Assembly: GCF_037042905.1 (NCBI RefSeq)
Contig: NC_087260.1
Coordinates: 11,160,001 to 11,224,000, forward strand
Direction: 5' to 3'
DNA: 64,000 nucleotides
DNA from: Lytechinus pictus
Taxonomy: Eukaryota
The translations under genes and the position numbers were made by a program. The notes below the pieces were generated by a model. It worked only from the letters and a program-made list of their open reading frames with translations, searched no databases and was not told the DNA's origin. Below, one piece after another: positions 1,752-57,229 of this stretch. Each line of letters starts with the position of its first letter. Position 1 is the first letter of the stretch.

Positions 1752-1892
1752 GGTAATGTGGAGCAGTTTACCCAACTAACAAACTGGCATGGATCAGGTG
1801 TGTTGTACTTTGGAGACCATGTGTACAGTGATTTGGTCGAGCCATGTTTGAAGAACGGCTGGAGGACAGGTGGCATTATACCAGAACTCGAT
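1752..1892 (+). CDS. NT5DC3: NT5DC2/3-like 5'-nucleotidase domain protein, internal exon ([28 protein letters not shown]...[12 protein letters not shown])
   Basis: ctgtag acceptor, gtaagt donor, 141 nt, phase 0/0. Contains the HAD motif VLYFGDHxYSDL and GWRTGxIIPEL typical of NT5DC2/3. Upstream exons lie outside the window. Orthology to NT5DC2 versus NT5DC3 is not resolved. Confidence 0.92.
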
Positions 1893-15606: not shown

Positions 15607-16635
15607 TCAGTAACGAGTGTGACCACCTCCTGCAGCAATAACGGCTTCACAGCGCTGTCTCATGGAGCTGATGAGGCGATTGATGTCTCTGACGTCCAGT
15701 GCATCCCATGCAGCCTCCAGAGCCACACCCAGCTGCTGCAGTCCAAGTGGATGGGCTTCGAGCTGGTCGAGACTCCTCCCCATCATGTCCCAGACGTGCT
15801 CTATCGGGTTTAAGTCCGGGGACCTCGCTGGCCACTCCATACGCTCAATCCCCTGGCCCTCAAGGAACTCGGTCACCACCCTAGCTCGGTGGGCACGGGC
15901 ATTGTCATCCATGAAAATGATGTTTTGTCCCACATTTTCTGCAAATGGCACCACTATAGGTTCAAGGACCTCATCCCTGTACCTCACTCCTGTCATTGCT
16001 CCCCCTGGGACCAGGTAGAGACGAGTACGGTTGGCGTAGGTGATGCCTCCCCACACCATGGCGCTGCCTCCCCCATAACGGTCATGTTCTGCAATACAGG
16101 GGTCTGCAAATCTCTCTCCTGGTCGCCTCCAGACTCTCGAACGTCCATCATTGTGGTCAAGGGAAAATCTGCTCTCATCTGTGAACAGAACTCTACGCCA
16201 TTGCTGTCTGGTCCATCTGACATGCTCCCGGGCCCAGTTGAGACGAATTCTTCTGTGAGCAGGGGTGAGTGGGACACACTGAGCTGGCCGTCTGGCATGC
16301 ATATTGGCTCTGTGAAGTCGGTTACGGATTGTTTGAGTGGAAACAATCACTCCAGTTGCTGCAGCGAAGTCATTGTTGAGGCGGCGTGCACTGTGAAAGC
16401 GGTTGCGGAGGCTGAGATTCGTCAAGTAGCGATCATCTCTAGAGGTTGTCGAAACTGGTCGGCCACTGCGGGGTCTCTCGGAGTATAGCCCTGTCTCTCG
16501 GTGTCTTTGATTTGCTCTGCTAATGACACTGTGTGACACGCCCATCATTCTGGCTACTCTTCGCTGACTGAGGCCAGCTTCCAGCATCCCTAGGGCTCTG
16601 GCTACATCTGTTTCACTTAGGTGGTGTCTTGGCAT
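15607..16635 (-). CDS. Tc1 transposase, DD34E, 342 aa, uninterrupted
   Basis: ATG at 16635 (MPRHHLS...). N-terminal HTH with GRP motif, VLFTDESRF, FMDDNARAH, SPDLNPIEHVW. 34 residues counted between the second D and the E. Confidence 0.97.
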   Translation of the reverse strand: MPRHHLSETDVARALGMLEAGLSQRRVARMMGVSHSVISRANQRHRETGLYSERPRSGRPVSTTSRDDRYLTNLSLRNRFHSARRLNNDFAAATGVIVSTQTIRNRLHRANMHARRPAQCVPLTPAHRRIRLNWAREHVRWTRQQWRRVLFTDESRFSLDHNDGRSRVWRRPGERFADPCIAEHDRYGGGSAMVWGGITYANRTRLYLVPGGAMTGVRYRDEVLEPIVVPFAENVGQNIIFMDDNARAHRARVVTEFLEGQGIERMEWPARSPDLNPIEHVWDMMGRSLDQLEAHPLGLQQLGVALEAAWDALDVRDINRLISSMRQRCEAVIAAGGGHTRY

Positions 16636-17030
16636 TGCTGTTGTAGGCAAGTTGTTGATTGTACAGACTAAAGACGGAAAATGCTTTGGAAGACACTTGT
16701 CTTATGGCCCACTGCAATGATGCCAGAGACATCATGAAAGAACTGCATGTGTGAAATTGATGTCATTGTGTTTGATGGCATTCTGGACAGCTGTATCTTG
16801 GCATTGCTATTGTCAGCAAGTTGTTGATTGTAGAGACTAAAGACAGAAAATGCTTTGGAAGCCACTTTTGTACGGGCACATTGCAATGATGCAAGAGACA
16901 TGAAAGAACTGCATGTGTGAAATTGATTTCATTGTGTTTGATGGCATCCTGGACAGCTGTATCTTGGCATTGCTGTTGTCAGCAATTTGTTGATTGTAGA
17001 GACTAAAGACAGAAAATGCATTTGAATCCA
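16628..17030. repeat. About 167-bp tandem repeat (2.4 copies) spanning the transposase start region
   Basis: cttggcattgct[g/a]ttgt...gttgattgta[c/g]agactaaagac[g/a]gaaaatgc recurs with minus-strand ATGs at 16635, 16804 and 16970. Confidence 0.9.
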
Positions 17031-19481
17031 CATTTGTACCACTTCACAATGGGCCCACTTTGCAGGATATGCAATAATGCGAGAGACATCATGCAACAAC
17101 TGAAACCACCCATGTGTGAAATTGTTACAGGGTGTTTGAGGAGATTCAAGACAGCCATATTCGGGTATTTCTAGAAATACAACACCCGGTTTGAAAATTG
17201 TATACACACATTAAAAAGTGGTCCTTAACTTTTTTTGAGTAGTGTATTTAGAACATAACTATGGCTATTCTCAAATCTTTTGAGACCACAGAAATCTATC
17301 CGACTTTGAAGAAATTTGACTCAGAATATAGAAGAGGTACATACATGTAACGCATGTTTTGCATAATCTGGGTCCTGTCTTTCAAAGAGTTATGATTGAT
17401 CCAATCAATCATAACTCGATGGAAATCCATGAGTGGCATGATTTTTTTCTTCAAGAAATTTGCAAATTGTCCTTTGTAAACAAAGGCGAACACATAAAAT
17501 TGTCAAGAAATCAATGATTTTATGTTATATACATCGTATCTAGAAAATATTTTGAACAAACATTCATTTTGTGGGTTTTGCTGGCTTTCCATAGTTGAGG
17601 TTGATCAGATGAATCGCAACTCTTTTAAGACGGGGGCCCAGATCTAAAAAAATTGCATTGCTACTTGGTGGAATATTCAACTTATAAAATAGAAGGTCGA
17701 CTTTATGCTACTTTACTTGTAGCCTACCGTTATTAGAATTCCATGCGACATATCAAGTAAGGTTTTACCAGGTGATTAACGAACCCAAAATGTAGGATTT
17801 TCTGTCTGATGTCATTGTTTGTTTGCCTGTTTTGATATGATTTCTCAGTTTCAGTTTTGCAAACCCTTCTAGAGCTATGTGTAGTTATAATTGATATTTG
17901 AATACAATGCTATTCTAAACTGCATGTGATATATTAAGTTTTAATTTCATACCTGCATATATTTCACAATCTGATCTACGTGTACTGAAAAAAATAATAA
18001 TGGGTTTTTTTTTCCATACAAAAAAATAATGTCATTAGTAAAAAAAAAATCCATTATAATGATCTCAACTAGTTACTGGTATAAAAAGTGTTTTAAAATG
18101 GTAGTTTTGCCTGTGGGGATGCAATGCTGGAAACAATATTGAAAATATGGTTTTGTCAGAAAAAAGGCAAAAACATTGGTGTTCAGAGTATGTTTTCCCC
18201 CATATTATTTTCAGTTTTCAATGCAAGCAAAATAAATATAGAGAGAATAGTAGGTCTATACCTGCACTTTTATAGGGGGTATAATAAAAAACAAGAATAG
18301 GGTATCGTTTTAAATATACCTTAAACTTTAAAAAGAAAAAGAAATCACAATAATTAAGAGGGCACATTGAGATTGACCTCATGCCAAACAATGATATGAA
18401 AAATAAGAAATACAAGTTGAACACCAGACGACTAAGATAATTAGGGAATTTCCCTATGACCTAACCAGTGATGTTCACACAGGATACAGCTCACACAACT
18501 TTAAAGTTTAAAGGCATTGGTTAATTATGATTTGGCTTTTAAAAGTCGAGCTGTATAAGGTCCCAATTGTTACCTGTGTAAAAATGAAGGCCTGAAAATA
18601 TGAAGCATTTAGTGTGCTTCAAAGAGCAAAAACATAGGCAATTGAATAGTGCATACACATTGTCCCCAGCAGAGAAAGATGTTTTTTTTTTTAGTAACAG
18701 ATATCTTGAAAGTGTCTGCAAGAATTCAATATTTTTGCTAGGTATATATTTTATACTACATGACTCTCATTAAAGTACAGAATTTTTTTTTTAACAGGAA
18801 TTTTTTTATGATAATCAGTGGCCCTTGTTTGATCTTCATTTTTTTTCATGGGTCGATCAAACACAGTATAAGAGCCATGGGGTCACGCGGTCACCAGCAT
18901 TGGCAATTCAAAAAGAATTCTAGTGATACTGTCTAACTGTTTGAAAGTGCTAGCTGTTTGCAGAAAAAAGACAAAACATGCTGAGAAATTTTGAACATAT
19001 TTTAAAAAATTGCCACAACAAAGACTGTTTACAACTGTTTAAGAACTTTCTTCCAACATACCTTTTGCAAACATTTTGATAACTTTGCAAATTCTGGCAA
19101 AATCCCAGATTTTCAAATGTATGCTGCCCATTGAGATATCCCCTTTTAGAGATCATGGCTTGAAGTTTTCTGATAAAGTTTAGAAGTAGTAGGATTGGTA
19201 ATTTTGTTGCCACACTACATTACTAGTTTCATGTGAACACTCTGGTAGCTGTTGACTACAAGGAGCAAATTAATTACTTGGAACGTAGGCGTGACTGCGA
19301 TGATATATTGGTAACTTCCACTGAGAACAACTTTGTTGATCAATTGTTGCTTGTCCTCATGGGTGAAACTAGGTCAAAGGATGTAGATTACCAAAGGGGA
19401 ATTCCATGATTGCGATGTTATTTAGTAACAAACATTTAGAGAGTGTGTGTTTCTGTTCCTTGCCTTTTTAAACATTTTTTA

Positions 19482-20016
19482 CACAGTAAAAAATGCTGTT
19501 TAAAATGTCTAAACAACAGTGTTATGAACCTTACAGTAGCTGTTTAAACAGTTTAACCAAAGCTTTGAAAATTTAAACAGCAAAAGTTTAATTTTCAATA
19601 TTTACTTCTCAATAAATATGATTGTTTAAAAAAATGTCAAACAACTACTGTAAGATTCATACAGTAAACAGCATTGTATAAAATATTAAGTTAGTCAGTG
19701 GAAATCTCTGACAAAATTCTTCGTAAAATCCTCCCCTGTTCTATCACTTGAACTCTTCTATTCCAACTATAGTAAAATTTACAAAGGGGGGGGGGGAGAT
19801 GACTATTATTAAACAGGAGAATTTCGATGAGATATAGAAATGATAATCCATACTCAGTAAAAAAATATAGCACGTTTAAGCCCATCACTCTAACAACAAG
19901 TTGTTTGAACTTTTTTTTAATTGTTTAAACTTTTTAAACAAAAATTTTAAACAACAGTTGTTAGAGAGACGGGCTTTAACAACGTGCTTAAACTTTTAAA
20001 CAGCGTTTTTACAGTG
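19482..20016. mobile_element. MITE with CAC...GTG termini and TA flanks
   Basis: ta|cacagtaaaaaatgctgtttaaaa ... ttttaaacagcgtttttacagtg|ta, with many internal tttaaac repeats. Confidence 0.75.
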
Positions 20017-20233
20017 TAAAACAATTGTGGAAGCATTAATTTCATTCATAATCATCTCTTGAATTTCATCCTTGCCACCTAAATGTATTACCCTCAATGA
20101 TAAAACCAATATTTAACATATTTACTTTTGATTGATTTGTAGGTTTAAAGTGGCATTTCCTTTGTGTCTTCCTGTTCATGAAGATTGTTCTTCTGTTTTA
20201 ATTGAATAATTTTTTTCTCTCTTTCCTGTTCAG

Positions 20234-20320
20234 GATGAGATCGAGATCTGCAACTCCCTTCCTTTCAAGAGAGCGGTCATATGGTTGAATGCATTGCAAG
20301 ATCTTATAGAAGCACACCAG
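20234..20320 (+). CDS. NT5DC3: NT5DC2/3-like internal exon (DEIEICNSLPFKRAVIWLNALQDLIEAHQ)
   Basis: Polypyrimidine tract plus cag acceptor, cag|gtaagt donor, 87 nt, phase 0/0. Continues the frame after IIPELD. Confidence 0.88.
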
Positions 20321-21465
20321 GTAAGTGAATGATTGATAGAAGGTTAGAATGAATTTATGGATAGATAGATGGATGAATGGATGGATGGATCTAGGTAGAA
20401 GGAATGGTCATATATGGTTGAATGCATTGAGATCTTCTAGAAGCGCACCAGGTAAGTGAATGATTGATAGAAGGTTAGAATGAATTTATGGATAGATAGA
20501 TAGATAAATAGATAGATTAGATGAATGGATGGATGGATATAGGTAGAAGGAATGATCATATGGTTGAATGCATTACGAGATCTTCTAGAAGCGCACCAGG
20601 TAAGTGAATGATTGATAGAAGGTTTGAAGGAAGGAATGAAATAACTAATGGATGGATTGACTGATGAATGAACAAAAGAACAACAGAAAGAACGAATGAA
20701 TAGATATAGGTGGTTGGATAGATAGATGAAATGGTAGTTTGGTAGAACTTAGAAGGCATTACAAGATCTTAATCAGAGGCTCATTGGGTGAGTGAAGGAT
20801 CGATATAAGGTTTGAAATAATGACTGGATGGATAGGTAGATAGATGGATGGATGGATGGATGAATGCATGAATGGATGGATGAATGAATGAATAAATGGA
20901 TTTATAGGTGGATGGATAGATAGTCATATGATTGAAGACATTACAAGATGATAGATCATAGAGGCGCATCAGGTTAGTGAAGGATTGATAGAAGGTTTGA
21001 AGGAATGAATTGATTGATGGATGAATGAATGGATAGATGGATGGATATAGACAGATGGAAAAGTAGAAGGAAGGGTAATGTGGTTGAATGCATTACAAAG
21101 TTCTACAAAACTTATAGAGGCTCATAAGGTGAGTGAAGGATTGGTAAAATATTTGAATCTTAGAAAGATTGAAGTATGAATGAATGAATAAATGGATAGT
21201 GGGATGGGTAGATAGGAGTGAATTATAGGACCTTCAGAGGCTCGTCAATTGAGTGAATGATTGATGGGATTGAAAGAATGGAAGTATGATTGGTGGATCA
21301 TGGAATGATTGAATCAATGAATGAATTGATCAGTGAATTATTTAATAAGTACTAGTAAATGAATGGATAAGTGGATTGATAGATGGATATATAAATAGAA
21401 GGATGGAATAGGCACATGGTAGAATGCAATGCATTATAGGACCTCATTGATAATCAGGTGAGTGT
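20275..21465 (+). repeat. Minisatellite of exon 3' end + splice donor + (GGAT/GAAT/GATA)n, about 8 units
   Basis: The unit ggtcatatggttgaatgcatt..agatctt.tagaagc.caccag|gtaagtgaatgattgatagaagg repeats every 130-190 bp with increasing divergence. Confidence 0.85.
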
Positions 21466-21485
21466 CCAGACTATACAATCTATCA

Positions 21486-21738
21486 NNNNNNNNNNNNNNN
21501 NNNNNNNNNNNNNNNNNNNNNNNNNNNNNNNNNNNNNNNNNNNNNNNNNNNNNNNNNNNNNNNNNNNNNNNNNNNNNNNNNNNNNNNNNNNNNNNNNNNN
21601 NNNNNNNNNNNNNNNNNNNNNNNNNNNNNNNNNNNNNNNNNNNNNNNNNNNNNNNNNNNNNNNNNNNNNNNNNNNNNNNNNNNNNNNNNNNNNNNNNNNN
21701 NNNNNNNNNNNNNNNNNNNNNNNNNNNNNNNNNNNNNN
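21486..21738. other. Assembly gap (N run)
   Basis: Run of n. Confidence 1.
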
Positions 21739-22060
21739 TGGAAAGGTCGATGGGGCAGTCCTGTTTTTTGATTAAATTACAAGAATTGAACAGAATTAAA
21801 TAGAATGTTGATAAAAAAAGGAGTGAACAGAATGGTTGATGAATGGATGGCTGACTGGCTGGATTGATAGAGTGATGGATTAATTGAGAAAAGAGGAAGG
21901 ATATGCTGCGATTTATGTTAGTAAACTTTACCACATATCAAAACGATCCTTCAATATCATAATTATTGATGGACTCGAAACAAAGTTGTAAAGTAATTAC
22001 ACACTAGGCATAAATATAGAGAGTCTGATTGATCTTTATATGTTTCTTTATTTCTATCAG

Positions 22061-22125
22061 GTACATGAGTCAGCTGACTGTCGAGCTGTAGTGAATTCAT
22101 GGATCATTGAGAAAGACCAGCTTAG
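22061..22125 (+). CDS. NT5DC3: NT5DC2/3-like internal exon (VHESADCRAVVNSWIIEKDQLR)
   Basis: tttctatcag acceptor, ag|gtaagg donor, 65 nt, phase 0/2. The phase matches the next exon. Confidence 0.88.
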
Positions 22126-23181: not shown

Positions 23182-23392
23182 GATGACGACCAAGTCTCTC
23201 TTCAACCAGCAGTTCGGCAGTGTCTTCCGTACGCACCACAACTACTCCTACTTCACGTCCCGCCTCTGCCGCTTCGCAGACATCTACATGTCCTGCGTCG
23301 GCAACCTCCGCAACTACTCGTTAACGCACACCTTCTACCCGCGGCGTACGGCCCTGCCGCACGAACTTTCGTATAACTTCACAGTGCAATGA
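23182..23392 (+). CDS. NT5DC3: NT5DC2/3-like terminal coding exon ([17 protein letters not shown]...RFADIY...[13 protein letters not shown]...stop)
   Basis: tttcccccag acceptor; the first G completes the AGG codon. FGSxFRT, RFADIY and FYPRR motifs are characteristic of the family. TGA at 23390-23392. Confidence 0.95.
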
Positions 23393-26965: not shown

Positions 26966-27941
26966 TTTTTGTCTCACCTGCATAGCAGAGTGAGACTATA
27001 GGCGCCGCTTTTCCGACGGCGACGGCGGCGGCGGCGGCGACGGCGACGGCGGCGTCAACACCAAATCTTAACCTGAGGTTAAGTTTTTGAAATGACAGCA
27101 TAACTTAGAAAGTATATGGACCTAGTTCATGAAACTTGGCCATAAGGTTAATCAAGTATTACTGAACATCCTGCCTGAGTTTCATGTCACATGACCAAGG
27201 TCAAAGGTCATTTATGGTCAATGAACTTAGACCATGTTGGGGGAATCAACATCAAAATCTTAACCTAAGGTCAAGTTTTTGAAATGTCATCATAACTTAG
27301 AAAATATATGGACCTAGTTCATGAAACTTATACATAAGGTTAATCAAGTATCACTGAACATCCTGCATGAGTTTCACATCACATGACCAAGGTCAAAGGT
27401 CATTTAGGGTCAATGAACTTTGGCCGAATTGGGGGTATCTGTTGAATTACCATCATCACTTTGAAAGTTTATGGATCTGATTCATGAAACTTGGACATAA
27501 TAGTAATCAAGTATTACTGAACATCCTGTGCAAGTTTCAGGTCACATGATCAAGGTCAAAGGTCATTTAGGGTCAATGAACTTTGGCCAAATTGGGGTAT
27601 TTGATGAATTACAGCCATAAATTTGAAAGTGTGTTGGTCTAGTTCATAAAACTTGGACATAATAGTAATCAAGTATCACTGAACATCCTGTGCGAGTTTC
27701 AGGTCACATGATCAAGGTCAAAGGTCATGTAAGGTCAAAGAACTTTGGCCACGTTGGGGGTATTTGTTGAATTGCCATCATATCTCTATAAGTGTATTGG
27801 TCTAGTTCATAAAACGTGGAAATAAGAGTAACCAAGTATCACTGAACATCTTGTGCGAGTTATAGTAGTTTTCAAAATCAGCACTGCTGCTATATTGAAT
27901 CGCGTGATGCAGGTGAGACGGCCAGAGGCATTCCACTTGTT
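26966..27941 (+). mobile_element. Helentron-associated (HINE/DINE-1/pearl-like) non-autonomous element with internal tandem array
   Basis: ttttt-gtctcacctgcat ... atgcaggtgagac subterminal inverted repeat, a (GGC/GAC)n microsatellite after the 5' IR, about five 162-192-bp core repeats (ctagttcatgaaact...caaggtcaaaggtca), and a TT end. Confidence 0.75.
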
Positions 27942-28556: not shown

Positions 28557-28771
28557 NNNNNNNNNNNNNNNNNNNNNNNNNNNNNNNNNNNNNNNNNNNN
28601 NNNNNNNNNNNNNNNNNNNNNNNNNNNNNNNNNNNNNNNNNNNNNNNNNNNNNNNNNNNNNNNNNNNNNNNNNNNNNNNNNNNNNNNNNNNNNNNNNNNN
28701 NNNNNNNNNNNNNNNNNNNNNNNNNNNNNNNNNNNNNNNNNNNNNNNNNNNNNNNNNNNNNNNNNNNNNNN
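28557..28771. other. Assembly gap (N run)
   Basis: Run of n flanked by CT-rich sequence. Confidence 1.
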
Positions 28772-30278
28772 CTTCTCTCTTTCTACCCCACTCCCACCAA
28801 ACATATTTCTGTCATATTCACAGATACATGAGTACTGCAACATTAATGCACAAAATTCTCACTTGTGGGCCACATTTCAATAATAGTGGACCAGCAGTAT
28901 CAGTATTCAATATTTATCTTTATATTCCTGGTAGAATAATACCAAATGCCAGTATGTGTGGTCACTGTGGTAATATTTGATGTTTCTAGAATTTATATAT
29001 TTTAATGCATGCTTTGATTGACATTGATAAATACCTTGCTATTGCTTGCAGGTTTAGAATTGAATGTAAATATTTGAATTGGAATAAATATCTGATAGAT
29101 GCTCTTGTTAATATCTTTTATCTGCCAAAAAGTTGTTGGAAATGAATTGTTTCCTTTAAATATGTTTTCTTCTTACCTTGCATGATGAGATTATGCAATA
29201 TGTCTTTCCTGTTTTAATAAGATTTCCTAAAATTCACCTTTAAATTTTACTTGCTGCAAATTATTTTTGTTCTCTTATTACGTTGATGAAAATCGATTGT
29301 ATAATAATTGTAATGAGTTAGCAGCTACCAAATGCATGTAGCATAAATCCATTTGTGGCACCAAAAGTTTTTAATTTAATTATTCTAATAATTATGATCC
29401 TCGTTAACTTTTGAATGCAGATGTAGTAATGATTAATTTATTTTGTAACCAAAATACAAAAGTGTCAACTATTGACCGATCTGTGTTTTATTCATGACTG
29501 CATGTTATTGGAATTGTTATATAATTGAAAATACTGCATGATTCAGGAATGGATTCAGGTTTTCGTAGAAGAATGGGATTGCAACTCTTAGAAAGTAACT
29601 GAACAGATTTGATTTGGACCACGTTGCTCCCTCTTTTTTTTCAGTGAAAAGGGCACATTACATAACTTTTATTGATCAACGCAATCTTTTGTGGTTCTAT
29701 AAGTTGTCATACTTACCGAAAGTTGAGAGTTTGAAACCATATTGACTTTGTTGTGCAATCATTGTTATTGCTTCTTGTTGTTGAATACTTACTATGTAAA
29801 ATAAAATAATGCAATAATCTTAACAATATAAACAATGTTTTTAGTTCTTTTGTGAGATATTTGTTGCGGCAATGAGAGAGGCAGTAAATCGGCGATTTGT
29901 CTTCACCCACTTCATCTGTTTTTTTTCCATTTTAGTCGTATCTACCTCCTTCAAAGTTTATCTTCCTCTACAATCAGTTCATCTGCTAACCATTTGGTCT
30001 AATGGTCATGTAGCCCATTTACCATTTTGTCTAATTTCGTGTTAATAGGCTATACACATTGACCTGTATTCTGAACTCGGGTTTAAATTAAACCCTGGTT
30101 TAAATTGTGGATTAAGTATGGAGAGCCAATTGGGGCACAAATTATTAACAGTACACATCCAATTCATTAACTCATTTGACACTCAAATTGTTCATAATTG
30201 TCTGGAATGATAACTCAAGGATTTTTCTTCATTATGAAAGCAAAAGGAAACAAAATAGTAAACATAAGAAATATACAA

Positions 30279-32715
30279 ATTGAGCTGTCTAGACTGGAAA
30301 CCAATCTATGCATCCAACGATGTCAACCATGCCTATGATCTGTTTTACTCAATTTTTTATGATGCTTATAATGAATGTCTTCCTACTGTTAACAGTAAAA
30401 AAAAAAAAACACGATTTCACAAACCTTGGATTTCTTCTGGCATCTTGAAATCTATAAACAAAAAAAATATCCTATATAAAAATTTTCACAGATACTCTGG
30501 ACCAGAAAAGATTAAAAAAAGGAAAGAAGAAAAATACAAAAGCTATAAAAACTGTTTGGTAAAAGTAATTCGGTTTGCAAAAAGAGAATATTATAATAAA
30601 AAATTTAACACCTTAAGAGGTAACATGAAGAAAACATGGCAAGAAATTAATAACATATTGGGGAAAAAAGCTCAAATTTCTCTACCAACCAAAATGTTTT
30701 ACAATAATGAATCTTTTGATACCAATCAAATGAAATCTATTTATTTCAACAGATATTTTGCAAATTTGGGCAAAAATCTTGCTCAAGTCATCCCTGACCC
30801 CCACACAGAGTTCATGTCTTTTTTAGGAGACAACAATATTCATTCAATGTTTTTTAAACCAACCAATATAAATGAAATACTAAAGATCTGCTCCTCCTTG
30901 AAATCAACGTTTTCCTGTGGCTCTGATGATATTATCCCATCTATTGTGAAAAAATGTATTTATCAATGTGTCCATCCACTGTGCCATATATATAATATGT
31001 CTCTTGAATATGGTGAAGTTCCTAATGCATTTAAAATAGCTAAAATTGTTCCAATTTTCAAAAAGGGTGATCGTAAAGACATTGTTAACTATAGACCAAT
31101 TTCTGTTTTACCCATCTTCTCAAAGATACTAGAAAAAATTGTTTTTGAACGTTTGTACAGCTTTTTGAATCATAACAATATATTAATCTCACAACAATTT
31201 GGTTTTCGTAAAAGATATTCAACATACATGCCAATATTTCACATGTATGATCGTATAATGCAAGAAATAGATAAGGGTAATCTCACCATTGGTATATTTT
31301 TGGATCTCTCGAAAGCATTTGACACCGTTGACCATGACATACTTCTTAAAAAAATGAAACATTATGGGATAAGAGGTCTCGCTCTTGATTGGTTTGATAA
31401 TTATTTATCAAATCGCATGCACTATGTTGTGGTCAACGGTGTCAAGTCAACTTTCAGTCATGTATCACACGGCGTTCCGCAAGGGTCTGTCCTCGGCCCC
31501 TTGCTTTTCCTTTTGTATATCAATGACCTTGTAAATTGTTCCTCAATTCTTAATTTCATACTCTTTGCTGATGATACCAGTATTACTCTTTCTCAAAAAA
31601 ATATTATTCCTCTCATTAACACCATAAACATTGAACTTCGTAAAGTCGTTGTCTGGCTTCAATGCAATAAACTTTCACTGAACCTTGAAAAAACTAAATT
31701 TGTACTATTTAAAACACAAACTAAAAAAATTGGTAATGACATTCCTCCAGTTATTATGGATGGCAAGATTATTTCCCAGGTATCAAATATAAATTTTTTA
31801 GGTATCAAGATCAATGAATTTCTATCCTGGAAACCTCATATTGATGAATTATGCACTCGTTTATCAAAAAGTACTGGTGTCCTCCGCAAACTGAAGTTTA
31901 TTTTACCCAGACATGTATTAATTTCACTTTATAATACTTTGGTTTTACCCCATCTCACTTATTGCTGTATGCTATGGGGGAATGGATTCAAAACACATTT
32001 ACATAGATTATTTCTTATTCAAAAAAGGTTAATCAGAACAGTTTGTAATGCACATTTCAATAGTCACACAAACAAGTTATTTCTTGATTGTAAAATATTG
32101 AAAATTTCTGACTTGGTTCTTATGTATACTTATATATTTATGTACAATTACCATTCAAATCTCTTGCCAAATATTTTTGATAATCTCTTCAACACAAATG
32201 CCTCTTTCCATTCATACTTTACGCGTCATTCAGCAGATCTTCACCAATATCTTCCAAAAACTAAAATTACCCAAAATTCTCTACGTTGTAGAGGAATTAA
32301 GCTGTGGAATGATTTAAATAATGATATTAAACAAAGTAAAACCATAAATAAGTTTAAAATACTCTTGAAAGTTGAATTTTTTGCTCAGTATAAAAACTCC
32401 TGCCAATAGCATACTGTAGGTCACTATTATTTATAATTATTACTTCTAGTTTGCTTGTTTGTTTATTTCCCCTATGTTAGCCCATTGTTTTTTGTTTTTT
32501 TTTTAAATTGTATTTCAATGTTATTTGTTGTTCACTCTTTATGTACATGTATGTATTATATTAATTTGTATTTGATTGTACCATGGTGGTGCCCCACTCA
32601 CAAGTTTTTTTTAATGAAAACTTCTAGGGGCTCCCAATCCCATGTTTTTACCTAATTTGTATATACCTGTATTTTTATGATTGATTGATTGAAATAAATT
32701 TTGAATTGAATTGAA
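30279..32715 (+). mobile_element. 5'-truncated non-LTR retrotransposon (CR1/L2-group)
   Basis: RT ORF, about 300-bp 3' UTR, AATAAA then a (TTGAA)n tail. ACAA is present at both junctions (30275-30278 and 32716-32719). Confidence 0.9.
30280..32409 (+). CDS. LINE ORF2 fragment, reverse transcriptase domain, open but lacking the endonuclease and a true start
   Basis: KPWIS, NYRPISVLP, QFGFR, FLDLSKAFDTVDH, GVPQGSVLGPLLFLLYINDL, LFADDT, FLGIKI. No stops over 709 codons. Confidence 0.93.
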   Translation: MSCLDWKPIYASNDVNHAYDLFYSIFYDAYNECLPTVNSKKKKTRFHKPWISSGILKSINKKNILYKNFHRYSGPEKIKKRKEEKYKSYKNCLVKVIRFAKREYYNKKFNTLRGNMKKTWQEINNILGKKAQISLPTKMFYNNESFDTNQMKSIYFNRYFANLGKNLAQVIPDPHTEFMSFLGDNNIHSMFFKPTNINEILKICSSLKSTFSCGSDDIIPSIVKKCIYQCVHPLCHIYNMSLEYGEVPNAFKIAKIVPIFKKGDRKDIVNYRPISVLPIFSKILEKIVFERLYSFLNHNNILISQQFGFRKRYSTYMPIFHMYDRIMQEIDKGNLTIGIFLDLSKAFDTVDHDILLKKMKHYGIRGLALDWFDNYLSNRMHYVVVNGVKSTFSHVSHGVPQGSVLGPLLFLLYINDLVNCSSILNFILFADDTSITLSQKNIIPLINTINIELRKVVVWLQCNKLSLNLEKTKFVLFKTQTKKIGNDIPPVIMDGKIISQVSNINFLGIKINEFLSWKPHIDELCTRLSKSTGVLRKLKFILPRHVLISLYNTLVLPHLTYCCMLWGNGFKTHLHRLFLIQKRLIRTVCNAHFNSHTNKLFLDCKILKISDLVLMYTYIFMYNYHSNLLPNIFDNLFNTNASFHSYFTRHSADLHQYLPKTKITQNSLRCRGIKLWNDLNNDIKQSKTINKFKILLKVEFFAQYKNSCQ

Positions 32716-55654: not shown

Positions 55655-56900
55655 AGTGGATAACATGATCTCGGATCTAGTCATTGTGGGAGAGATGATG
55701 GATCTTGTTATGTCTACATCCTGTGGGAGACATGACCAGATCAAAAGATTTTGGATCCAGACATTTCTACACCCAGTGGGAGAGAGGATCAGATGACAAG
55801 ATTTTGGATCTAGACATGTCTACATCCTGTGGGAGACATGACCAGATGAAAAGATTTTGGATCTAGACATTTCTACACCCAGTGGGAGAGAGGATCAGAT
55901 GACAAGATGTTGGATCTAGACATGTCTACATCTTGTGGGAGACATGACCAGATGAAAAGATGTTGGATCTAGACATGTCTACATCCTGTGGGAGACATGA
56001 CCAGATGAAAAGATTTTGGATCTAGACATGTCTATGCCTACATTATGTGGGAGAGAGGATCAGATGACAAGATCTTGGATCTAGACATGTCTACATCATG
56101 TGGGAGACATGACCAGATGAAAAGATTTTGGATCTAGACATGTCTAGGCCTACATTATGTGGGAGAGATGATCAGATGACAAGATCTTGGATCTAGACAT
56201 GTCTACATCATGTGGGAGACATGACCAGATTGAAAGATTTTGGATCTAGACATTTTTTTTCTGTGGGAGAGAAGATCAGATGACAGGATCTTGGATCTAG
56301 ACATGTCTAGGCCTACATCCTGTGGGAGAGATGATCAGATGACAAGATATTGGATCTCATTATGTCGACATCCCGTGGGAGAGATGATGATATGACGTGA
56401 TCTTAGATCTCGTCATGTATACATCCCATGCGAGAGAAAACCAGGGGAGCGTTTCATGAAAGGACTTGTCGGACGTTTTATCCGACAATTCATCTTTTAA
56501 TTATCCGACAGTTACCATAGGAACAGAAACTCTTAGCCAATCAAAATCAAGGAAAGTATCTGATAACTTGTCGACCAAAAATGTTGATGAGACGCTTCCC
56601 AGATGACAAGATGAAAAAATCTCGGATCTCGTGTTTACATCCTGTGGGAGAGATGATCAGATGACAAGATCTTGGGTCTCGTCATGCCTTCATCCTGTGG
56701 GAGAGATGATCAGAAGACATGATCTGGGATCTGGTCTTGTTTACATCTCGTAGAAAGGATAATGAGAGGAAAAGAACTCGGATCTCGTCATGTCTAAATC
56801 CTGTGCACAAGAGTTGTTCAGATGCCATGATTTTTTTTATCTTGTCTCGTCTACTTCCCCTACGTGGTAGATAATTATAATGACAAGATCTTGGATCCAT
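55655..56900 (+). repeat. Minisatellite of about 52 bp with alternating variants
   Basis: tgtgggaga[catgaccagatgaaaag | gaggatcagatgacaag]at.ttggatctagacatgtctacatc repeated. Homogeneous from 55720 to 56350 and degenerate at the edges. Confidence 0.92.
56445..56599. mobile_element. 155-bp MITE inserted in the minisatellite, CAG TSD
   Basis: cag|gggagcgtttcat ... atgagacgcttcc|cag. Removing it restores ccagatgacaag. Confidence 0.75.
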
Positions 56901-57006: not shown

Positions 57007-57229
57007 CATGTTGTCTGATCACTCAAATAAGAGGATGCAGACATGGGATCTGAGATCTCGTCATGTTGTCTGATCACTCAAATAAGAGGATGCAGACATG
57101 GGATCTGAGATCTCGTCATGTTGTCTGATCACTCAAATAAGAGGATGCAGACATGGGATCTGAGATCTCGTCATGTTGTCTGATCACTCAAATAAGAGGA
57201 TGCAGACATGGGATCTGAGATCTCGTCAT
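57007..57229 (-). repeat. Perfect 55-bp tandem repeat (4 copies), inverted relative of the 52-bp array
   Basis: catgttgtctgatcactcaaataagaggatgcagacatgggatctgagatctcgt at 57007, 57062, 57117 and 57172. Confidence 0.95.

What the first reader, a model, noticed from the sequence alone, without database searches (positions are those of the whole stretch)
20275..21465. A coding exon's 3' end and 5' splice site amplified into an intronic minisatellite (array of decoy donors)
Seen: the last 45 or so nt of the 20234-20320 exon plus its donor CAG|GTAAGT are repeated about 7 more times downstream, separated by GGAT/GAAT microsatellite. Donor GTs lie at 20321 (true), 20452 and 20600 (both identical CAG|GTAAGT), 20788 (GG|GTGAGT), 20973 (CAG|GTTAGT), 21129 (AAG|GTGAGT) and 21458 (CAG|GTGAGT); the one near 21250 is lost. 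Divergence rises with distance from the exon, yet most copies keep a consensus-like donor. Read-through from the true donor meets a stop at once (GTA AGT GAA TGA), so use of any downstream donor gives a premature stop. Inference: the array may act as competing donors coupling splicing to NMD, as a U1-binding array, or may be a neutral slippage product. The copies lack polypyrimidine acceptors, so they are unlikely to be new exons. The array runs into an assembly gap and may be longer.
Basis: partly seen in the sequence, partly recalled or inferred. Interest (0 to 1): 0.7.

Follow-up and report, generated by a model that had tools for sequence, protein, structure and literature searches.

The report
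Intron minisatellite repeating a splice donor
The last 46 bases of a coding exon of a sea-urchin 5'-nucleotidase-family gene, with its splice-donor signal, have been copied seven more times in tandem into the next intron. The array is real, but it is a known, tolerated kind of repeat ("mirage"), and the only splice seen in RNA uses the first, genuine donor.

Summary
Exon 20234-20320 is real, and one public run holds its splice to 22061. Its last ~46 nt, its donor and the intron start recur seven more times (periods 120-209 nt), separated by GGAT/GAAT/GATA microsatellite, up to the N gap at 21486. Two copies keep the perfect CAG|GTAAGT donor, three keep a donor matching 8-9 of 9 consensus positions, one a weaker one (7/9), and one has lost GT.

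The repeat core occurs nowhere else in the 812-Mb genome. The gene belongs to the 5'-nucleotidase family (PF05761).

Copying ran from exon to intron. The exon differs from the majority of the old copies at four sites, all third-codon and synonymous. Exons A and B also fill the matching segment of human cN-II to within one residue.

There are at least two age classes: a young clade (exon, u1, u2) and old units (u3-u7).

The donor 9-mers are not better kept than the rest of the unit (10/63 against 101/428 mismatches, p=0.20). No junction from a copy was seen, though the RNA evidence is thin.

This is a boundary-spanning minisatellite, as in amphioxus ("mirage") and in human F7, IFI6, CBS, LMNB2 and PDGF. 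Notes of this scan describe at least 15 other such arrays on other DNA of the same genome. Verdict: an ordinary new member of a known kind, with no support for a control role.

The parts
1752..1892 (+). Upstream coding exon of the same gene (ends ...IIPELD, donor GAT|GTAAGT). An 18.3-kb intron follows.
   Evidence: PF05761 positions 283-333. It aligns to human cN-II chain residues 357-394. Sequence read. The acceptor is predicted only.
20234..20320 (+). Coding exon A (29 codons, phase 0 at both ends). Its last ~46 nt form the head of repeat unit u0.
   Evidence: A 90-nt unitig of run X1 spans exactly 20234-20323, and a contig joins 20320 to 22061 with GT..AG ends. Translation.
20275..20405 (+). 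Unit u0: exon tail, authentic donor CAG|GTAAGT (GT at 20321), intron start and GGAT-type spacer. The in-frame stop TGA lies at 20330-20332.
20406..20553 (+). Unit u1: perfect donor copy (GT at 20452), 131 nt after the true one. It is 89% like u0, with a +2 and a -2 indel in the former coding part.
   Evidence: Groups with u0 at 95/95 support.
20554..20741 (+). Unit u2: perfect donor copy (GT at 20600). Its head is young (91% like u1); its tail after about 20620 is of the old type, so the unit is chimeric.
20742..20926 (+). Unit u3 (old): TGG|GTGAGT, GT at 20788, followed by a 97-nt (TGGA)n run at 20825-20921.
20927..21082 (+). Unit u4 (old): CAG|GTTAGT, GT at 20973.
21083..21202 (+). Unit u5 (old): AAG|GTGAGT, GT at 21129, with a 9-nt insertion in the former coding part.
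21203..21411 (+). Unit u6 (old): donor lost (CAA|TTGAGT at 21249).
21412..21485 (+). Unit u7 (oldest, 51% like u0): CAG|GTGAGT, GT at 21458. It is cut by the gap.
   Evidence: (family D10).
21486..21738 (.). Run of 253 N (assembly gap or masked). It was not filled or looked up.
22061..22125 (+). Coding exon B (65 nt, donor TAG|GTAAGG). This is the acceptor used by the true donor.
   Evidence: Joint 20320->22061. Sequence, translation.
23182..23392 (+). Last coding exon C, with stop TGA at 23390-23392.
   Evidence: PF05761 positions 400-459 of 460, E=6e-20. It aligns to human cN-II residues 455-510. Sequence.

Best explanation
This is a locus-specific, boundary-spanning minisatellite (a "mirage") in the third-last intron of a 5'-nucleotidase-family gene.

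Origin (inferred). A segment of about 130 nt was duplicated in tandem by slippage or unequal exchange. It ran from 46 nt inside exon A, across the donor, into an intron start rich in GGAT/GAAT microsatellite. The array then grew and was reshuffled by unequal exchange, in at least two rounds.

State of the units (shown). The old units u3-u7 keep an earlier state of the exon's silent sites and an earlier GTGAGT donor. Units u1 and u2 (the latter at least in its head) were copied or converted from the exon later.

Selection (inferred). The first unit is held in place by selection on the coding exon. The other units drift, donors included.

Splicing. The first donor is used, which restores the normal mRNA; the 20320->22061 junction is shown. 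That the first of several equal donors wins by 5'-to-3' order and exon definition is inferred from the human F7 experiments. Any rare use of a copy would carry the TGA at 20330, about 180 nt or more before the last exon junction, and would probably be degraded (inferred).
For: - Anatomy and uniqueness.
- Real exon and real junction.
- Gene family.
- Direction of copying. The exon differs from the old-unit majority at 20296, 20311, 20314 and 20317 only. All four are third-codon and synonymous (Leu, Glu, Ala, His). The chance that four random changes all fall on third positions is 0.012.
- Exon A, exon B and the split codon make 51 residues, against 50 in human cN-II between the aligned flanks. 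The exon tail is therefore part of the family's old architecture.
- Two age classes: clade (u0,u1) at 95/95 plus u2 at 87/92, against an unresolved set of old units with branches of 0.13-0.41.
- Neutral decay of donors: 10/63 against 101/428 mismatches, p=0.20; old copies 10/45 against 90/302, p=0.38. The donor window ranks 10th of 84.
- Precedent: PMC1557585 (F7, IFI6, CBS, LMNB2, PDGF) and PMC3087553 (amphioxus mirages do not disturb regular splicing).
Against: - The RNA evidence is one run of unrecorded library type, kept as contigs, with depth about 2-5 at this locus. Contigs drop rare variants, so low-level use of the 20452 and 20600 donors cannot be excluded.
- Those two copies are perfect 9/9 matches to the consensus. 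The F7 study found that perfect-consensus pseudo-sites can compete, though there the first site was weaker (PMC1557585).
- Six of seven copies keep GT, and positions +4 to +7 (AGTG) are invariant in all eight units. This could hint at constraint. However, the windows were centred on the donors, and eight related copies give little power.
- No orthologue or population data were available.
Confidence: 0.8

Rival explanations
1. The copies act as competing donors. A share of transcripts splices from a copy, takes in the TGA at 20330 and is removed by NMD, so array length sets the gene's output.
For: Two copies at +131 and +279 nt have the same perfect CAG|GTAAGT and the same 16 nt upstream and 33 nt downstream as the true donor. 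The stop lies more than 50 nt before the last junction. IFI6 and CBS do use the first one or two pseudo-sites (PMC1557585).
Against: Only the 20320->22061 joint is seen. The donors decay at the same rate as the rest of the unit. The copies lack an upstream acceptor partner. In F7, LMNB2 and PDGF only the first site is used (PMC1557585).
Confidence: 0.08
2. The array is a U1-binding platform. It could suppress premature cleavage at the AATAAA hexamers that the GAAT repeats create, or enhance recognition of the true donor.
For: Five copies besides the true site pair well with the U1 5' end (duplex -9.9 to -11.7 kcal/mol), and a sixth (u4) pairs more weakly at -7.7. Two AATAAA hexamers lie in the array, at 20891 and 21187.
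Against: There is no excess conservation of the U1-pairing bases. The intron as assembled is short (1740 nt, including the 253 N, whose true length is unknown). The same structure arises at many unrelated genes of this genome (earlier notes of this scan), which fits a mutational by-product better.
Confidence: 0.04
3. Reverse direction: the minisatellite came first, and the exon's 3' end and donor were recruited from its first unit.
For: Exon A alone gives no Pfam or PDB match, so its sequence is poorly conserved in the family.
Against: Exons A and B fill the cN-II-equivalent segment to within one residue. The four exon-against-old-unit differences are all synonymous. The core is absent elsewhere in the genome.
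Confidence: 0.03
4. Assembly artefact next to a gap.
For: The array abuts a run of N, and repeats are often misassembled.
Against: The units differ by 9-49% and carry private indels. Contigs of a public run match 20234-20323 without any difference, and others lie on 20482-20709.
Confidence: 0.02

Closest known systems
Amphioxus "mirage" minisatellites (Adh3; globin genes BflGb6 and BflGb9), as described in PMC3087553
   Same: [quoted passage not shown] Units reach about 150-160 bp, and many carry splice signals. Regular splicing is not disturbed. They show tandem-repeat turnover with partial homogenisation. BflGb9 duplicates the 3' boundary of an exon, as here.
   Different: Here each unit includes a tetranucleotide microsatellite spacer, so the period varies from 120 to 209 nt. 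The units fall into two clear age classes, with the youngest next to the exon. Length polymorphism could not be tested.
Human F7 intron 7 37-bp VNTR (PMC1557585)
   Same: The first unit spans the exon-intron boundary. The authentic donor is followed by identical pseudo-donors, which stay silent while the most upstream site is used.
   Different: The F7 unit holds only 4 nt of exon, and its donor is weak (consensus value 74). Here 46 nt of exon are copied, and the true site and two copies are perfect-consensus sites. Only 2 of 7 copies are still identical.
Human IFI6 (6-16) and CBS boundary minisatellites (cited in PMC1557585)
   Same: Donor-bearing units follow the authentic donor.
   Different: In those genes the first one or two pseudo-sites are used constitutively. 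Here no such use was seen, and any use would give a premature stop.
Human LMNB2 (100-bp unit) and PDGF (81-bp unit) intron minisatellites (cited in PMC1557585)
   Same: Long units, with only the authentic donor used.
   Different: I read no details beyond that citation.

Membership tests
Boundary-spanning ("mirage") minisatellite | Head-to-tail tandem array of a unit of tens to hundreds of bases | tested here: met
   Eight units with periods of 120-209 nt.
Boundary-spanning ("mirage") minisatellite | The first (or last) unit spans a real exon-intron boundary, so the authentic splice site is one of the repeats | tested here: met
   Unit u0 is 20275-20405. The exon end at 20320 is confirmed by the 20320->22061 joint and by the exact-exon unitig.
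Boundary-spanning ("mirage") minisatellite | The copies derive from the gene's own boundary and not from a dispersed repeat | tested here: met
   The core is found only at this locus. The differences from the exon are all synonymous.
Boundary-spanning ("mirage") minisatellite | Regular splicing goes on at the authentic site | tested here: met
   The canonical joint is present and no other joint was reported. This rests on one low-depth contig run.
Boundary-spanning ("mirage") minisatellite | Length instability or polymorphism between haplotypes | not testable with these tools
   There is one assembly, and only one public run holds the stretch.
Regulated unproductive splicing (alternative donor coupled to NMD) | The alternative junction is observed in RNA | tested here: inconclusive
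   None was seen, but the data are contigs of depth about 2-5.
Regulated unproductive splicing (alternative donor coupled to NMD) | The alternative site is conserved beyond neutral expectation | tested here: not met
   10/63 against 101/428 mismatches, p=0.20. The donor window ranks 10th of 84.
Regulated unproductive splicing (alternative donor coupled to NMD) | A premature stop lies more than about 50 nt upstream of the last exon junction | tested here: met
   TGA at 20330-20332. It lies at least 119 nt before the copy's cut site, plus the 65 nt of exon B, ahead of the 22125|23182 junction.
5'-nucleotidase family (Pfam PF05761), host gene | Match over the curated cut-off | tested here: met
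   Last exon 72 bits (cut-off 28.5). Exon-by-exon matches run from C16:11141140 to 11183368.

The most novel reading that the evidence does not exclude
Exon edges in this sea urchin may be preferred birthplaces of minisatellites, re-seeded again and again from the selected exon copy. This locus would show it through two waves of copying, with the youngest units next to the exon and the old units keeping the exon's earlier silent-site states like dated fossils. That would point to a duplication mechanism tied to splice sites or transcription, not to random slippage.
Probability: 0.15. Interest if true: 0.55.

Novelty: new member of a known kind. Interest (0 to 1): 0.2.

Why it matters
Taken alone it matters little. 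It is one more tolerated boundary-spanning minisatellite, with no sign of a control role.

Two points may be of some use:
- The true donor and two copies are all perfect-consensus sites in near-identical context. That makes a clean natural test of "first donor wins" outside mammals.
- The old units preserve earlier synonymous states of the exon and the earlier GTGAGT donor, which gives a small internal record of how the exon end has changed.

Together with the many similar arrays that this scan's notes place in the same genome, the locus adds a data point to an open question: do such repeats arise preferentially at exon edges?

Tried and rejected
- Pfam and PDB searches with exon A and exon B alone gave nothing, even at E<=10. 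The family was found through the last exon instead.
- tblastn of exons A and B against the paralogue on C12 gave only noise. That gene is the cN-II-like member and is too distant to test conservation of exon A.
- The genome hits of the 442-nt query looked at first like a dispersed family. They are plain (GGAT)n and (GATA)n microsatellites without the core.
- A search for more units behind the gap found only short microsatellite-like words at about 21820-21890.
- The search for RNA runs returned a single run of unrecorded type, kept as contigs.
- The stretch laid included the N run. No depth and no letters were obtained there, and none were sought.
Exons were searched one by one by reference.
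- Codon-position counts among the copies (16/95, 15/96, 24/97) show no clear coding constraint on the copies. The small excess at third positions is mostly the exon-derived states shared by u1, u2 and u4.

Full report
**1. What is there**

On the + strand at 20234-20320 lies an 87-nt coding exon, here called exon A. From about 20275 onward, three things recur seven more times: its last ~46 nt, its donor CAG|GTAAGT and about 35 nt of intron start.

- GT positions are 20452, 20600, 20788, 20973, 21129 and 21458. One copy, at 21249, reads TT instead.
- Start-to-start distances are 131, 148, 188, 185, 156, 120 and 209 nt. The units are separated by GGAT/GAAT/GATA tetranucleotide runs.
- The array is very poor in C on this strand, 74 of 1166 bases.
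- It ends at a run of 253 N, at 21486-21738. Behind the gap only short microsatellite-like words remain.
- I did not fill or look up the N run. The stretch laid included it, and no depth or letters came back there.

**2. Is it real and specific**

- TRF scores the first units at 429-466.
- An 85-nt core query finds only this locus in the 812-Mb assembly.
- A 442-nt query also hits many other places. The fetched examples are plain (GGAT)n and (GATA)n runs without the core.
- The units differ by 9-49% and carry private indels, so assembly error did not make them.
- Contigs of a public run lie on the exon unit and on 20482-20709.

**3. The host gene**

- The last exon (23182-23392) matches the C-terminal end of Pfam PF05761, the 5'-nucleotidase family, at E=6e-20. 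It also matches human cytosolic 5'-nucleotidase II chains.
- A family search of the whole assembly finds the gene exon by exon from C16:11141140 to 11183368. Window exon 1752-1892 sits at profile positions 283-333.
- A more cN-II-like paralogue lies on C12.
- Exon A follows an 18.3-kb intron and is the third-last exon. Exon B is 22061-22125.
- Exons were searched one at a time by reference.

**4. RNA**

Only one public run holds the stretch. Its library type is not on record and it is kept as contigs.

- One contig joins 20320 to 22061 with GT..AG ends.
- A 90-nt unitig spans exactly 20234-20323, without a difference.
- Introns are covered at a similar low depth of about 2-4.

So the exon and the normal junction are real. 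No junction from a copy was reported, but contigs at this depth cannot exclude rare ones.

**5. Direction and history**

- The exon differs from the majority of the old units (u3-u7) at 20296, 20311, 20314 and 20317. All four are third codon positions and all are synonymous: TTG/TTA, GAA/GAG, GCA/GCT or GCG, CAC/CAT. The chance of four third positions out of four is 0.012. This fits an exon that kept its protein while the copies froze earlier states.
- Between the flanks aligned to human cN-II, exon A, exon B and the split codon give 51 residues against 50. The exon tail therefore belongs to the family's old architecture.
- The old units also share GTGAGT where the exon now has GTAAGT.
- A tree groups u0 with u1 (95/95) and then u2 (87/92). 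Units u3-u7 form an unresolved set with long branches.
- Unit u2 is chimeric: a young head and an old-type tail.

Hence there were at least two rounds of copying or conversion from the exon end, with the youngest units next to the exon.

**6. Are the donors protected**

- Against the exon copy, the donor 9-mers show 10/63 mismatches. The exon-tail columns show 47/211 and the intron-start columns 54/217.
- Fisher p=0.20 for all copies and 0.38 for the old copies only.
- Among 84 sliding 9-column windows the donor ranks tenth, and an exon-tail block (GAATGCATT) is kept better.
- Positions +4 to +7 are invariant. However, the windows were centred on the donors, which biases this.
- There is no evidence of selection on the donors, though power is low.

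**7. Consequences of using a copy**

- Read-through meets TGA at 20330-20332. Any transcript cut at a copy would then carry a stop about 180 nt or more before the last junction. That it would be degraded is inferred from the general exon-junction rule and was not tested in urchins.
- The copies have no acceptor-like pyrimidine tracts: at most 9 of 15 pyrimidines, against 12-14 at the real acceptors. They are therefore unlikely to become exons.

**8. Comparison with what is known**

- In man they are known in F7, IFI6, CBS, LMNB2 and PDGF. In F7 the identical pseudo-donors are functional but silent, because the most upstream site is chosen. Only perfect-consensus pseudo-sites competed with a weaker first site (PMC1557585).
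- Here the first site is itself perfect.
- Earlier notes of this scan, which are unchecked AI notes, describe at least 15 other such arrays on other DNA of this same genome. They name it the painted sea urchin, Lytechinus pictus. I did not verify the species.

**9. Verdict**

The functional readings are unsupported. This is a tolerated by-product of repeat birth and turnover, and a new member of a known kind.

Its particular features are the composite unit with a microsatellite spacer, the two age classes, the silent-site record, and two perfect-consensus copies in near-identical context.

Noticed in passing
window 15610-16701 (-) and 16627-17039: A 364-aa open frame for a Tc1/mariner-type transposase (HTH_Tnp_Tc3_2 and DDE_3) sits in the 18.3-kb intron before exon A. 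A 166-nt x 2.5 tandem repeat lies at its start.
   Followed up: partly
window 30268-32406 (+): A 713-aa open frame with a reverse-transcriptase domain (RVT_1, E=3e-35), downstream of the nucleotidase gene. It is probably a non-LTR retroelement.
   Followed up: partly
window 19456-20025: Just upstream of exon A, the contigs of run X1 pile up to summed depths of 200-1700, with many internal joints and loose ends. This points to a very abundant short dispersed repeat rich in TTTAAAC words.
   Followed up: no
window 55699-56437, 56601-56732, 57007-57229: A 53/112-nt minisatellite of about 13.6 units, a short relative of it, and a 55-nt x 4.1 array whose copies are 100% identical.
   Followed up: no
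window 27055-27861: Tandem repeats of 163-192 nt, in 2 to 3.5 copies at 85-91% identity. They lie downstream of the gene's end.
   Followed up: no
window 28557-28771: A second run of N, 215 long.
   Followed up: no
G000:C12:23332234-23351969 (L005 holds 23347500-23352500): A paralogous, more cN-II-like PF05761 gene. Just after its exon for profile positions 263-346 lies a long Asp/Gly-rich low-complexity open frame (L005:1267-1875), in another frame.
   Followed up: no
genome-wide, e.g. L006 and L009: Kilobase-long pure (GGAT)n and (GATA)n microsatellites are very common in this genome (793 first-look candidates; examples). They could be the substrate that favours unequal exchange at this intron start.
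   Followed up: partly
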